A stretch of 37,669 nt of DNA from positions 1-37,669 of the forward strand of contig JAHLWZ010000961.1 of NCBI GenBank assembly GCA_020536535.1. The letters run 5' to 3'. Each line of letters opens with the position of its first letter. The first letter of the stretch is position 1. Shown piece after piece: positions 6,624 to 11,600 of the stretch. A program made the position numbers and the translations under genes. Source of the DNA: Pelomyxa schiedti. Taxonomy: Eukaryota > Protista > Evosea. The notes under the pieces were generated by a model that saw only the letters and a list, made by a program, of their open reading frames with translations, was not told the DNA's origin and did no database searches.

Positions 6624-7080
6624 GGGGTGATGGCAGCCAAGTTGGCCAACTAATTATGGTCATTCACGGGAACGAGTGAGTTCAAGCTAACAGACACCAG
6701 CCAACCGAGCACCCCCTCTGCATCGTGTAAATAGTTACGACGAAGTTGTTAGATAAAACATCTAACACACCCGAGGACAGCAACACTATTCAGCCCACAA
6801 CGTCCCTCACCCAGACCGCCACTCTTCACCGGCCAACGAACCCACGTTATAAACCCCCTCTTGTTTTGTGAAAATGGTTGGACAAAGATTGAGACCAGAT
6901 TTTCCCTGAATGGATCAAGAAGTCTATTGCCCGGTCCTTCAAAAATCGAAAACATTCGACTTTGTTGCGTCCCGTCAAACAGGCAGACTCTCTGCGTTGG
7001 GTTGACACGAGATATCAACACAATTGACAACAAAGCACCGGGAGGGAGGTTTGGTGAGATCTTCTGGTGTAATCGATGCA

Positions 7081-8580
7081 ATGTCCGGAAGGGACTGTGA
7101 GTACTACTATTACTTCACTTATGAAGTTCTGGCAATAGTAGAGTTGCCCAACATTCATAACTACGGTGCGTTGTAGAGCTCGGTTTTTTCTTAACATAAC
7201 TTTCTTCAAGCTCCGTTTGACAGCCTTGGAGACGAAGTGTTAGTACGGATACTTTCGTATTTGAACTATAGAGCCCTTGTGGTGGCCTCTCGCGTGTGTA
7301 AGCGATGGCAAACTGTCTGCTCCCTGCCGCTACTAGCACCGACAACAATGTATTGTGCCTTTTCCTTTTGATTCTTAGTGAAATCGGTTACATTCTAGAT
7401 GTCGTCCAGGCCTTACAACTGTACCTAATGATGTTGATCGCAGACGAACATTCAAGTGGAAGAAAATGCTTTGCAACTGGGATTATGTTATCAAATTTAA
7501 GAAAAAGAAGGTCACTGGACCTTCTTCTGGTAATCACCTTATGCTGTACCTAGTTATACGATCGTTGTTGCAAGGGAATACCCGACTGCGTGCGCAGTAG
7601 GGCCTGGTATTTGCTATCTGGGGTCCCTCTTGCAACACCTTCTCCGGCTCATTCACATATGATTTACAAAGTATGCACTTACTACTTATAGTACTCATAG
7701 TTATAGGAATTGCTTGCACACCCATGCCCTTGGGAAGATACCATTACAGTTGCATGCAAGGATGCAGTTAATCGTGATATACTTGGATATAGGCAAGCTT
7801 ACCACCCCGCACTAGAAGCTTACTAACTATCCCTCAGGGTGCAGAATGTTATCCAGGCGTACAGCTTGTATGACCCAGAGATTGGCTACTTCTGGGGACT
7901 TGACAAAATCGTCAATTTTCTTCTAATGTATATGCAGGAAGAAGATGCATTTTGGTGTGTATCAATGTGAGGGAACATATCTGACATTTGTTGTAGGGTT
8001 CTAGCGCAACTTCTAAATGACAGCCGGTATAATATGCGAGGTTTTTTCCTGAAGGGATTGCCGGGGCTCCATGCTGCCACGGTGCGGTTTGAAGAACTTC
8101 TACGAAACCAGCTTCCAGCACTTTCAGACCACTTCGTTGTCATTCCAAACTGTTTTTCCTTTGGCTAACTCTTTTTTCTATTAGAGCCATGAAGCCCTTA
8201 CGACTTCAGCTATATATATCAAGGCATGTATCTTTTTTTTCTCCAGGAAATGGGGCGACTTCTAAACCCCTCCAGGAGTGGCTGACTGTGATGTTCATAA
8301 ATACTCTGCCCCATGAAATGTGTGCCAGACTGTGGGACGTGATGTGGTTCGAAGGAACTGATATGATGTTTGGTGTGGCCTTGGCTATCCTTAAAAGTCT
8401 ACAAAGTATATTCCCAATCAAAACAATGAAACAGGTTTCCCTCTTCTAACTTTCGTCTAAAGGTAAGCTCCTGCGAAAAACTTTTGAGGAATGTGTTGCA
8501 ACATTCAAGAAATTGCGGGACTGGGACTTGCCTCCTGATGAATTGGTTAAGAGGGCACTCTCCATACCCGGCACTTTGTA
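7081..8580 (+). CDS. F-box + TBC (Rab-GAP-like) domain protein with degenerate catalytic motifs; many introns; start uncertain (possibly ~6874)
   Basis: F-box: FDSLGDEVLVRILSYLNYRALVVASRVCKRWQTVC (~7215-7320). TBC: KWKKMLCNWD...KLYDRCCKGIPDCVRSRAWYLLSG...NVIQAYSLYDPEIGYFWG...LLMYMQEEDAFW...EWLTVMF...RLWDVMWFEG...VALAILK; stop TAA at 8578-8580. Confidence 0.85.
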
Positions 8581-8664
8581 ATATGTTCCCCATAGTGTTG
8601 TTGTAAAACCTAGAGCAAAAATTTAAAACAAAAACAAACAAGTTTCTTTTTTTAAATCAAACAG

Positions 8665-11600
8665 CTAGTGTGTGTCTTGTGTTACATAGGAGATGGTGAT
8701 GTCATGCTGAGATTTTGTTGTGATTGTGTCTGGTGGCGGTGCAGGTGGTGGTGTGTCGCTGTAGTAGAATTCCATCAGTTCCCCAACAGGGAAGCGGAAT
8801 CCACCCTTTGGCGTTAGAAGGCCATCAGGGAACGGGGGAGGTGGAGGCGGAGGCGGTACTGTTGGCGGCGGAGGGGGTGTTGTCATGAGGGCTTCCAAGT
8901 CGAGTGGTGGAAGGCTCATTGGTGGGGGTGGAGGCGGTGTCATTAGTGTCTCTAAGTAAAGAGGGAGATCGGGTGAAGGAGATGCGGCGGCGGTGGTGGA
9001 GGTTGAAATGGGCTTAGGTGCACGCTTGTGGGTGTGGGAGCGGGTGTGCTTGGCCGTTGGTTTTTCATGAGTTTGATGGAGTGGTTCCTGCGGTAGTTTC
9101 TGTGTGGGTGGTGCTGGTGGAATGGGGCCGGGTGTGGGTGAAGGCGGAAGTTGTTGATCTTTTGGATCGCGTTCCGTTGTTGTGAGGGTGGATGGATGAG
9201 ATGCTTGTTGCGCTTCAAGGTTTTGACCTGTGTCCGGTTCGTTTGGTTTAACTCCAGGTAAAGGAGGTTTTGGTGAAACGCGCAAGTAGTATTCGAGTGC
9301 TTGTTCCAGTGCAGAAACTTTATTTTCGAGAAGAGAACATTTCGAAAGCAGGTCAGAATTCTCCTTCTCAAGTACACGAACCCGCTCACAGAGTAGGCAT
9401 TGCTCATAGTCTCCTATTTTCATTAAAGCCGATGAGGAGAGGCGTGCGGCGGAGGAGATCACTTGTGAAGGGTGTTCACTTGACACATCAACTTTAGCTC
9501 CGCTGGTCCCACTGTTGGAATTTTTGAATAAAAGCTGGTCAGTTGCATCTGGTTCGTCCTTCTTGGGTGATTGAGCAGCGAGTTCATCCATTGAAGATTT
9601 ATTGGGCCATTCTTTTTGTTGTGTGACAACCCCGCCTGTCTTGTAACCCTTCTTGCGTCTCACTTTGGGAGGTTCAGGAGAATACATGCCCTCGATATCG
9701 AAAGGTTTAGGCTCTGACTCCATGGCCCCTTCACTTCTTGAAGGCATAATTCCTAGGCCACCAGCCATACCAGAAATCCCAGCCAAAAGTTGTGGGTTCC
9801 ACCCAAGATTGACTGAATCTCTATTCATTGAAGACGATATCATTGTAGACAGTAATAACTTTTCAGACTTTTCCAGTACCCCAGTGTCCCAGTGGACATC
9901 CCTTAGGTCAAGAGCCAAATCACACTCTCTTAGATAATACGACTTCCAAAGTTTCATTTGTTCTGGGTCACAAGATATCTTCAGTGGAAGAACCTCACAC
10001 GTAGGAGATATTCGGCTTATTTGGTGTCCCGCGTACTGGGGGTTGAGGTATCTGGGACAGGTTGCATTTATCATTGACCAAACGGAGTTGGTTCTTTCAC
10101 TGAGATGTAAGGTCGTTCGTTGCTGCTCGTTATCACACAAAAAAGTGCCAAATCTGCAAGAATGGACTGCTGCTGCAATGTCACATAGAAATACATCACT
10201 GAATTCAAACTTAGATGGATTTTGTTCCATGATCTGAAACACACAGTCCAAAAACTGTATGAAAATAGGAGAGCGCTCAGACTCGGCAGCTAAGGGTGCG
10301 TTGGGCATTTGTGCGTGACCTACCCTTGTGTTGAACATGTGACCAAAACTGAGCCAGTCTTTTTCAACCAGGACCTGGTGATTGGATTAAAATAAATTGT
10401 GGTTGGAAGGAAACCTCAAATCCGTAAATTGTGCGAAAAAAAGGATCCAGAAGTAACATTGCAAGAGCACAAATTTGGGCCGTCCTATCCCAGCCATCTG
10501 AACAGTGAACTAAACAGGAACTCCCACGCTCCAATGCGGTGGCAACCTGCTGCGCACCTTGTAATATTTGTGCAACGTGATCCAGCCATTTGGTAGAATC
10601 GAGGCGAGCTCTCCAGGTGGATTCACAATTAAGCTAAGAACATCAAATAATACTTGGGGGTATTGTATTAGTACCTCTTCTTTTGTCAATGAGAGGCAGA
10701 AATCCCCGAGTTTTTCGTGAGCTGATCTCATAACATGCACATTTTCCACCTGGTGAAAATGAGTGAATGCACTAACGGAACGATATCTCTTACCCCTAGA
10801 AATTGAAGTTCCGTGTTTTCGTAAAGAGAAATGTCTTCTGTTCCACCCTTAAAACAATTATTCACTAAGCCAACAGTTCAAACATACTTGGTTTGCTCTA
10901 TTTATTACTGCATTGACACGAGGCCTGGCGTCCATGATAATAAAGGTGTCATTGTTGAGTGATGCCTTTCTTGCCTTCGATAAAAGTGTTTGGTCATGAA
11001 TGCTTCTGTTTGATAGAAGCCCAACACAAGGCTGCGCCGATCTCAGAAGAGCAGCGTGCGTGATAGGATGCCTCCAAGTAAGGGCAGGGATTCGTCCGGC
11101 TAGTGAGCATTTTAGCGTCATTGGAGTAACTAATGCTAAATACCTTTTCTGAAGTCGACTACATTGAACAGAAGGGTATCAGGCGCATCGGCCGGTACAC
11201 ACAGGACCCTGCGAACATAAAATCAGGGAGAAAAAAAGTAATAAAATATGTCCACCTTGGGTATGATGGGCAAAAGGAGTACATCGAGTTTATACTACTT
11301 AATCGCCAGCCAGTTCCAAGTACACCAAGCCGGCGGTACTCATCTTCAGCTTTATAAACCTTTGGATTTTAGATGTAAGCAGATTGGCCAAAGCAATAGA
11401 CAAGACATACTAGCCAACCATCTGATGGAAGGGGAGATTTGTCCTTAAATGCAAACAATTTCTCGACTTGACAAGAAAATACAATAGTGTTTAACCACTG
11501 ATCCAGTATTTGACAGAGTGTAGACTGATGAAAACTGAAGTGCAAGTATAGTCTTCGGAAATCCTTGCATTTGATAGTGAGCTTTCTTCTCCTCGATCCT

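What the first reader, a model, noticed from the sequence alone, without database searches (positions are those of the whole stretch)
7081..8580. F-box fused to a catalytically dead TBC domain: a possible SCF receptor for Rab GTPases
Seen: one spliced ORF joins a clear N-terminal F-box to a TBC1D10/USP6NL-like TBC domain. The Gln finger YxQG reads YFWG (~7883-7897). The IxxDxxR Arg-finger region reads ITVACKDAVNRD and is shortened, so it lacks an intact motif in either register. Known: TBC GAPs need both fingers, and F-box proteins use their C-terminal domain to recruit substrates to SKP1-CUL1. Inference: a pseudo-GAP repurposed to bind Rabs and target them for ubiquitination. I do not recall this architecture as characterised. 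The ORF track misses it because of the introns.
Basis: partly seen in the sequence, partly recalled or inferred. Interest (0 to 1): 0.8.

Follow-up and report, generated by a model that had tools for sequence, protein, structure and literature searches.

The report
F-box fused to dead RabGAP domain
An anaerobic amoeba (Pelomyxa schiedti) expresses a conserved gene that joins an SKP1-binding F-box to a Rab-GAP (TBC) domain lacking both catalytic fingers. It probably binds a Rab GTPase and hands it to, or holds it on, the SKP1 machinery instead of switching it off by GTP hydrolysis.

Summary
Window 7081-8581 (+) is a 10-exon gene for a 360-aa protein. A spliced cDNA contig (run X4) crosses all nine junctions in frame, so the F-box and TBC exons are on one transcript. 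The product is identical to GenBank KAH3743814.1 of Pelomyxa schiedti, auto-named "EVI5 protein".

Pfam finds an F-box (residues 32-68) and a full RabGAP-TBC domain (E 3e-39). USP6NL is the closest solved structure. In an alignment of 94 near relatives, the family's D, R and Q fingers read A167, D170 and W199. The segment after the Arg finger is 8 residues short.

A second copy (P0151, 80% identical, same exon structure) carries the same three changes. Synonymous sites between the copies are saturated while pN is 0.11, so both domains are under purifying selection.

The F-box docks on Pelomyxa SKP1 in silico: ipSAE 0.80 against a best control of 0.00.

No F-box+TBC relative was found outside this genome, and no paper describes one. 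Rab binding, CUL1 assembly and ubiquitination are inferred only. Yeast Roy1 and Rcy1 show that a non-SCF role is a serious rival.

The parts
7081..7165 (+). Exon 1 (start codon 7081; residues 1-28 plus the first base of codon 29). It encodes an N-terminal segment conserved with the paralogue.
   Evidence: cDNA contig junction 7165/7211; exact spliced mapping of P0002; in-frame stop upstream at 7003-7005
7211..7349 (+). Exon 2: F-box (Pfam residues 32-68 = 7219-7329). The LP motif reads L34-G35.
   Evidence: Pfam F-box-like E 1.4e-11 on this exon alone; predicted SKP1 contacts at residues 27-61
7399..7510 (+). Exon 3: linker and start of the TBC fold (the family's KW..M..W motif).
   Evidence: aligned to USP6NL from residue 88
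7554..7670 (+). Exon 4: TBC motif A (KGIP...R..W..L.G).
   Evidence: P122, R126 and W130 match nearly invariant family columns
7707..7792 (+). Exon 5: degenerate Arg-finger motif, I164 (7743-7745), A167 (7752-7754, family D), D170 (7761-7763, family R). It is followed by a segment 8 residues shorter than the family norm. The donor of the following intron is GC.
   Evidence: GC..AG junction seen in cDNA
7838..7954 (+). Exon 6: Gln-finger motif reading Y197-F-W199-G200 (7887-7898). This is the stretch most conserved between the paralogues.
   Evidence: Pfam RabGAP-TBC E 2.9e-12 on this exon; column counts Q 89/94, W 2/94; 95% identity in windows 191-220
7997..8135 (+). Exon 7: TBC core.
   Evidence: Pfam positions 114-156
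8185..8223 (+). Exon 8: TBC core (13 codons). The following intron has a GC donor.
8276..8405 (+). Exon 9: TBC core (W..F....P....R.WD motif region).
   Evidence: Pfam positions 169-212
8463..8581 (+). Exon 10: C-terminal helices of the TBC fold and stop codon TAA at 8579-8581.
   Evidence: model helices 329-355 at high confidence

Best explanation
The gene encodes an F-box protein whose substrate-recognition domain is a catalytically dead TBC domain of the USP6NL/TBC1D10/EVI5 type. Shown: it is transcribed and spliced as one mRNA. The TBC fold is intact, but the Asp and Arg of the IxxDxxR finger and the Gln of the YxQ finger are replaced by Ala, Asp and Trp. An old paralogue keeps the same state under purifying selection. 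SKP1 and cullin genes are present in the genome. Supported in silico only: the F-box binds the C-terminal helices of Pelomyxa SKP1. Inferred: without fingers the TBC domain cannot stimulate GTP hydrolysis but can still dock on the switch regions of its cognate Rab, presumably the GTP form. The protein would then act as a receptor that brings an active Rab, or proteins on the membrane that Rab marks, to an SKP1-CUL1 ligase for ubiquitination. Rab inactivation by GTP hydrolysis would be replaced by inactivation through ubiquitin. FBXO8, an F-box plus a Sec7 domain with no GEF activity in vitro, reportedly does this to ARF6.
For: One transcript: spliced contig across all 9 junctions, in frame, identical to the annotated protein. 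Domains: F-box E 1.8e-10 and RabGAP-TBC E 3.1e-39 on the full protein. Fold: TBC part pLDDT >90; best match is USP6NL in complex with RAB43, rmsd 1.8-1.9 A. Dead fingers: A167/D170/W199 against D 88/94, R 86/94 and Q 89/94, while 14 of 16 other nearly invariant positions are kept. Selection: paralogue P0151 has the same exon structure and the same three residues. pN is 0.109 with pS 0.82 (saturated), and the F-box has the lowest pN, 0.078. The stretch around the former Gln finger is the best conserved, 95%. In a second haplotype the coding differences are 5 synonymous and 2 conservative, and all indels fall in introns. SKP1: ipSAE 0.80 in three runs against a best control of 0.00. That mark was reached by 51 of 78 solved complexes and 2 of 108 mismatched pairs. 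The runs agree in at least 77% of contacts, partner pLDDT is at least 66, and the interface is SKP1 100-160 with F-box 27-61. Machinery: at least 5 SKP1 loci and at least 6 cullin loci. [quoted passage not shown]
Against: No test of Rab binding was possible. The Trp at the Gln-finger position and the 8-residue deletion next to the Arg-finger helix lie in the Rab-contacting groove and could have changed or abolished Rab recognition. The F-box has Gly in place of the LP proline in both copies; one report links that proline to CUL1 association, and another disputes this (PMC3098594). The characterised Rab-binding F-box proteins of yeast are non-SCF (PMC3084679). The SKP1 model may score high from memory of solved SKP1-F-box complexes. 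The family is so far seen in one species only, so conservation across species is untested.
Confidence: 0.45

Rival explanations
1. Non-SCF SKP1 complex. The protein binds SKP1 but not a cullin. Like yeast Roy1 (with Ypt52) or Rcy1 (with Ypt31/32), it regulates a Rab stoichiometrically, by sequestering or masking it or acting as its effector, without ubiquitinating it.
For: Roy1 binds Skp1 but not Cdc53, needs Skp1 to bind the Rab5-like Ypt52, and inhibits it without changing its turnover (PMC3084679). The LP proline is Gly in both paralogues. A finger-less TBC domain is well suited to hold a Rab without turning it over.
Against: The proline rule is contested: proline-less F-box proteins were found in CUL1 immunoprecipitates (PMC3098594). 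The F-box is the most constrained part of the protein, which fits either model. FBXO8 shows that the SCF route is used for a small GTPase.
Confidence: 0.25
2. The Rab is an address, not a substrate. The dead TBC domain binds a Rab-GTP only to place an SCF ligase on a particular membrane, where it ubiquitinates other proteins such as cargo, SNAREs or Rab effectors.
For: The same structural evidence as the main explanation. Nothing in the sequence distinguishes substrate from anchor.
Against: No second substrate-binding module: the protein is only an F-box plus TBC, 360 aa. In known F-box proteins the single C-terminal domain is normally the substrate binder (established knowledge).
Confidence: 0.12
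3. The TBC domain has been re-used to bind something other than a Rab, as TBC1D7 is a non-catalytic subunit of the TSC complex. That partner would be the SCF substrate.
For: Both fingers are lost and there is an 8-residue deletion beside the Arg-finger helix. TBC1D7-TSC1 structures appear among the weaker fold matches, showing that TBC folds can serve as scaffolds.
Against: 14 of 16 non-catalytic nearly invariant positions of the Rab-GAP family are retained. The best fold match is a TBC domain caught on its Rab. The former active-site region is the most conserved between the paralogues.
Confidence: 0.1
4. It is still a working GAP that uses substitute residues, for example R174 or R180 near the old finger, and the F-box only controls its own stability or location.
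For: Two Arg residues (R174, R180) lie within ten residues of the lost finger.
Against: R174 aligns with a non-finger position of USP6NL. Nothing substitutes for the Gln finger; Trp cannot position the attacking water (established dual-finger mechanism). A single R-to-A change inactivates RN-tre/USP6NL (R150A, PMC2064371). Here three catalytic-motif residues are gone.
Confidence: 0.05
5. Artefact: a mis-assembled or mis-annotated fusion of two genes, or a decaying pseudogene.
For: The genome comes from a fragmented assembly of 5337 contigs. The RNA evidence is an assembled contig, not raw reads.
Against: DNA contigs of 7.8 kb from two further runs are colinear with the window. The cDNA contig crosses the F-box/TBC junction with 110 nt on each side at uniform depth. 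A second locus on another contig has the same ten-exon fusion. Purifying selection is strong.
Confidence: 0.02

Closest known systems
FBXO8 / FBX8 (F-box + Sec7 domain; vertebrates)
   Same: An N-terminal F-box is fused to the catalytic-type domain of a small-GTPase regulator, with no other domains. [quoted passage not shown] This is the same logic as proposed here.
   Different: FBXO8 uses a Sec7 (ARF-GEF) domain rather than a TBC (Rab-GAP) domain, and its target family is ARF rather than Rab. It is an unrelated lineage, so the fusion is independent. Here the loss of catalytic residues is directly visible in the sequence.
USP6NL (RN-tre), TBC1D10A-C, EVI5: active dual-finger Rab GAPs
   Same: These are the closest TBC domains by sequence (USP6NL E 9.6e-36) and by fold. 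The TBC core and most invariant positions are shared.
   Different: They keep IxxDxxR and YxQ and are active GAPs; R150A kills RN-tre (PMC2064371). They have no F-box. The GenBank name 'EVI5 protein' is a similarity label only; no EVI5-type C-terminal extension is present in this 360-aa protein.
Yeast Roy1 and Rcy1: F-box proteins that bind Rab GTPases
   Same: They are F-box proteins that bind SKP1 and a Rab (Ypt52; Ypt31/32) and act in endosomal traffic (PMC3084679).
   Different: Their Rab-binding parts are not TBC domains, and they form non-SCF complexes. Roy1 prefers GDP-bound or nucleotide-free Rab.
Non-catalytic TBC proteins (TBC1D7 in TSC; other finger-less TBC domains)
   Same: A TBC fold is retained without GAP chemistry. 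Among the 94 nearest relatives one other protein (P0099) also lacks all three catalytic residues.
   Different: None of them carries an F-box. TBC1D7 binds TSC1, not a Rab.

Membership tests
F-box protein family | F-box motif recognised by the curated profile | tested here: met
   PF12937 at 40.8 bits (cut-off 24.3) and PF00646 at 33.3 bits (cut-off 20.5) on the full protein; 44.4 and 37.6 bits on exon 2 alone
F-box protein family | Binds SKP1 through the F-box | tested here: inconclusive
   In silico only: ipSAE 0.80 against a best control of 0.00. That mark was reached by 51/78 solved complexes and 2/108 mismatched pairs. Runs agree in at least 77% of contacts, partner pLDDT is at least 66, and the interface is canonical. 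The score may reflect memory of solved SKP1-F-box complexes. No binding assay was done.
SCF-type (CUL1-assembling) F-box receptor | Assembles with CUL1/RBX1 and directs ubiquitination of the bound protein | not testable with these tools
   SKP1 and cullin genes exist in the genome. The LP proline is Gly, and its meaning is disputed (PMC3098594).
TBC / RabGAP domain family (fold) | Full-length match to the RabGAP-TBC profile and a TBC fold | tested here: met
   PF00566 at 135.3 bits over positions 3-216 of 216; model pLDDT >90 over residues 86-355; Foldseek probability 1.00 to 9ltp, 3hzj and 4nc6
Dual-finger Rab GAP (catalytic membership) | Arg finger in IxxDxxR | tested here: not met
   The motif reads I164-T-V-A167-C-K-D170, whereas the family has D in 88/94 and R in 86/94 relatives. 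The HMMER alignment to USP6NL also places no Arg at the finger.
Dual-finger Rab GAP (catalytic membership) | Gln finger in YxQ | tested here: not met
   The motif reads Y197-F-W199, whereas the family has Q in 89/94 relatives. The paralogue reads the same.
Dual-finger Rab GAP (catalytic membership) | Stimulates GTP hydrolysis by a Rab, and binds a Rab | not testable with these tools
USP6NL/TBC1D10/EVI5 subgroup of TBC domains | Groups with this subgroup rather than other TBC classes | tested here: inconclusive
   Best solved relative is USP6NL, E 9.6e-36, against 7e-26 for RABGAP1L. The nearest Atlas fold cluster is named 'EVI5-like'. No phylogeny was built.
FBXO8 family | F-box followed by a Sec7 domain | tested here: not met
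   Pfam finds no Sec7 domain; the C-terminal domain is TBC. It is a functional analogue only.

The most novel reading that the evidence does not exclude
Pelomyxa uses a ubiquitin-based off-switch for a Rab. A finger-less TBC domain traps the active, GTP-bound Rab and, through its F-box, delivers it to an SKP1-CUL1 ligase. The Rab is then removed or disabled by ubiquitination instead of by GTP hydrolysis. This would be the first Rab-directed SCF receptor built from a pseudo-GAP. It would be an independent re-invention of the FBXO8-ARF6 logic, kept as two ancient paralogues that may address two different Rabs.
Probability: 0.3. Interest if true: 0.75.

Novelty: new variant of a known kind. Interest (0 to 1): 0.55.

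Why it matters
Rab GTPases are normally switched off by TBC GAPs. How ubiquitin ligases select Rabs is poorly understood, and no cullin-RING receptor that recognises Rabs through a GAP-derived domain has been described in the papers searched. This protein is a natural Rab trap wired to SKP1. If it works as proposed, it shows that pseudo-GAPs can evolve into ligase receptors, in parallel with FBXO8 for ARF6. It would also offer a compact 360-aa module for targeting a specific active Rab for degradation. In addition, it corrects a database label: the 'EVI5 protein' is neither an EVI5 orthologue by architecture nor a plausible GAP. The limits are that it is known from one hard-to-culture amoeba and that every functional step beyond sequence and models is untested.

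Tried and rejected
1) My first hand-drawn gene model (after) had four wrong splice sites: an exon-1 donor at 7097, an intron-3 acceptor at 7574, an intron-6 donor at 7967, and intron 9 as 8435-8467. The cDNA contig and the exact mapping replaced them.

2) Exons 1, 3, 4, 5 and 10 alone give no Pfam match. They are too short, which says nothing against the domain.

3) Searches for the architecture elsewhere all came back empty.
- Among the 94 longest of the 150 best matches to exon 6 in 1.84 billion representatives, only the two Pelomyxa proteins have an F-box.
- A word search with the F-box region (residues 10-89) finds only those two.
- A full-length word search adds only plain TBC proteins.
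- The metagenome scan gave 600 pattern matches, none confirmed.
- The Atlas searches by features and by fold list only TBC clusters without an F-box.
These searches have limited sensitivity and do not prove absence.

4) A possible third fusion on contig C88 (F-box about 6 kb from TBC exons) was rejected. Plus-strand ORFs of up to 135 aa that look like separate genes lie between the two; I did not annotate them, and the F-box ORF looked Kelch-like to my eye only.

5) P0001, the top-scoring hit, is a leucine-rich-repeat protein whose repeats match a short stretch by chance.

6) The N-terminus of P0153 resembles the 'FDSLG.E' start of the F-box, but Pfam finds no F-box in it.

7) Alternative splicing that restores the fingers is rejected. 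Both motifs lie inside exons 5 and 6, the introns are 36-57 nt, and the paralogue encodes the same residues.

8) dS could not be estimated because synonymous sites are saturated, so no numeric dN/dS is given.

9) The notes returned by the search of earlier findings concerned other places in the window and were not used.

Full report
**What is there.** The window is contig C961 of a 52-Mb, 5337-contig eukaryotic assembly. The region 7081-8581 on the + strand has no long ORF. Six-frame translation shows F-box-like and TBC-like pieces in changing frames, separated by very short gaps.

- Exon 2 alone matches Pfam F-box-like (E 1.4e-11) and F-box (1.7e-09).
- Exons 6, 7 and 9 match RabGAP-TBC at model positions 73-114, 114-156 and 169-212, which is colinear.

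**Are the exons one transcript?** Four public runs of one sample hold the stretch.
- Two carry 7.8-kb contigs colinear with the genome.
- One, X4, carries a 1110-nt contig covering 7059-8586 with nine precise excisions. Seven are GT..AG. Two are compatible only with GC..AG: introns 7793-7837 and 8224-8275.
- Every junction keeps the reading frame, and the frame runs from ATG 7081 to TAA 8579-8581.
- The junction joining the F-box exon to the first TBC exon (7349/7399) has 110 nt on each side.

One caveat: this is an assembled contig from a run of unrecorded type, not raw reads.

- The exhaustive search with exon 6 alone returned a 360-aa protein, P0002.
- A local script confirmed that P0002 is the exact translation of the ten exons defined by the cDNA contig.
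- In that script the exons were joined only to check the translation and to count substitutions, not to search.
- P0002 is GenBank KAH3743814.1, 'ecotropic viral integration site 5 protein [Pelomyxa schiedti]'.
- All full-length analyses used this stored id.

**Domains and catalytic residues.** The full protein has an F-box at residues 32-68 and a complete RabGAP-TBC domain at 125-325 (E 3.1e-39, model positions 3-216 of 216).
- The AlphaFold model gives pLDDT >90 for almost all of residues 86-355. Confidence is low for the N-terminal 80 residues, which only two sequences cover in the alignment.
- The best solved relative by sequence is USP6NL (E 9.6e-36).
- The best fold match is USP6NL in its transition-state complex with RAB43 (rmsd 1.8-1.9 A over 282 columns).
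- In an alignment with 93 relatives, the columns holding I/D/R of IxxDxxR read I164, A167 and D170. The family has D in 88/94 and R in 86/94.
- The Gln-finger column reads W199, where the family has Q in 89/94.
- The Arg in '...VNRD...' aligns with a downstream, non-finger position.
- The segment after the finger is 10 residues, against a family median of 18.
- Fourteen of the other sixteen nearly invariant positions are kept.

This is a selective loss of the catalytic apparatus in an otherwise intact TBC domain. A single Arg-to-Ala change at the finger already inactivates RN-tre/USP6NL (R150A, PMC2064371).

**Is it functional?** A second locus, G000:C751:10814-12465 on the minus strand, encodes P0151 (411 aa, 80% identical).
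- It has the same ten exons. Exons 2-10 have identical lengths, and all its introns are GT..AG.
- It has the same A/D/W residues and the same shortened segment.
- Between the two copies 82% of synonymous sites differ, which is saturation. Only 10.9% of non-synonymous sites differ. By region the non-synonymous figure is F-box 7.8%, TBC 10.0%, linker and C-terminal tail about 20%.
- The duplication is therefore old. The dead state predates it, and both domains have been kept by selection since.
- The best-conserved stretch, 95% identical, surrounds the former Gln finger. This fits a binding site still in use, but that region is also the most conserved across the whole family.
- A second haplotype (run X2) differs at 13 single-base positions and 4 indel sites. 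The seven coding changes are five synonymous and two conservative (L34I, I176V). All indels lie in introns.

**SKP1.** The genome has at least five SKP1 loci and at least six cullin loci, and at least 148 F-box matches.
- A 166-aa SKP1 (P0172) matching the locus on contig C76 was recovered through one of its exons.
- The complex prediction of P0172 with residues 12-90 of the protein scored ipSAE 0.80 in all three runs. The best of three controls scored 0.00.
- That mark was reached by 51 of 78 solved complexes and 2 of 108 mismatched pairs.
- The runs agree in at least 77% of contacts, and partner pLDDT is at least 66.
- The interface is SKP1 residues 100-160 against F-box residues 27-61, which is the canonical arrangement.
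- Many SKP1-F-box complexes are solved, so this shows likeness rather than binding.

**How it most likely works.**
- Shown: a conserved, expressed F-box + finger-less TBC protein.
- Supported by a model: SKP1 docking.
- Inferred: the TBC domain still recognises a Rab but cannot stimulate hydrolysis, so the protein holds a Rab on SKP1.

Two outcomes are then possible. The first is an SCF ligase that ubiquitinates the Rab or its neighbours. FBXO8 is reported to do this to ARF6 while lacking GEF activity in vitro (PMC6727740, PMC6724607).

The second is a non-SCF SKP1 complex that regulates the Rab stoichiometrically. Yeast Roy1 does this with Ypt52: it binds Skp1 but not Cdc53, and Ypt52 turnover is unchanged (PMC3084679). 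Rcy1 is the other yeast case.

The F-box has Gly instead of the LP proline in both copies. One report tied that proline to CUL1 association, and another found proline-less F-box proteins on CUL1 (PMC3098594). The sequence therefore does not decide between the two outcomes. I rate the SCF-receptor model at 0.45 and the non-SCF model at 0.25. The remaining weight goes to Rab-as-anchor, a non-Rab partner, residual GAP activity and artefact.

**Comparison with what is known, and novelty.**
- It is a member of the F-box family by motif and of the TBC family by fold.
- It is not a member of the dual-finger Rab GAPs, because both defining motifs were tested and not met.
- It works like FBXO8 but is not related to it.
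- The GenBank name 'EVI5' is a similarity label.
- I found no F-box+TBC protein outside this genome. I looked among the nearest 94 TBC relatives, by word search with the F-box region, in JGI metagenomes and in the ESM Atlas. All of these searches have limited reach.
- No paper in the library describes the architecture.
- A candidate third fusion on contig C88 is two separate genes.

I class it as a new variant of a known kind: an F-box receptor with a new, GTPase-regulator-derived recognition domain. The sequence itself is already public but uncharacterised.

**Verdict.** Interest is 0.55.

Noticed in passing
window 7793-7837 and 8224-8275: Two of the gene's nine introns have GC donors (GCAAGC, GCATGT) and are spliced in the cDNA contig. 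The paralogue has GT donors at both homologous introns. All introns are very short, 36-57 nt, often with a CTAAC-like branch site.
   Followed up: partly
window 8665-10338 (-): The convergent neighbour is the last exon of a myotubularin-related phosphatase gene (Pfam Myotub-related E 3.9e-24). It has a long Pro-rich, coiled-coil-like C-terminal tail. Only 83 bp separate the two stop codons.
   Followed up: partly
G000:C751:10814-12465 (-) (loci L001, L002, L005): Paralogue P0151 has an extra, strongly basic N-terminal extension of about 55 residues in exon 1 that the window copy lacks. It could be a localisation signal that separates the roles of the two copies.
   Followed up: no
window 7081-7165 (residues 6-29): The segment before the F-box (C-E-Y...F-T-Y-E-V/I-L-A-I-V-E/D-L-P-N-I-H) is conserved between the paralogues but matches no Pfam family. 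Residues 27-31 touch SKP1 in the model.
   Followed up: partly
window 7018-8700, run X2: A second haplotype or strain differs at about 1% of positions. One change, L34I, falls on the Leu of the F-box L-(P/G) motif.
   Followed up: partly
G000 contigs C76, C911, C832, C165, C1244: SKP1 is multi-copy, with at least five loci, and F-box matches number at least 148 of 405 candidates. This suggests a large SKP1/F-box system in this amoeba.
   Followed up: no
alignment A1, protein P0099: One other near relative (265 aa, source not looked up) also lacks D, R and Q (it reads A, K, P) but has no F-box. Finger loss therefore recurs in this TBC subgroup.
   Followed up: no
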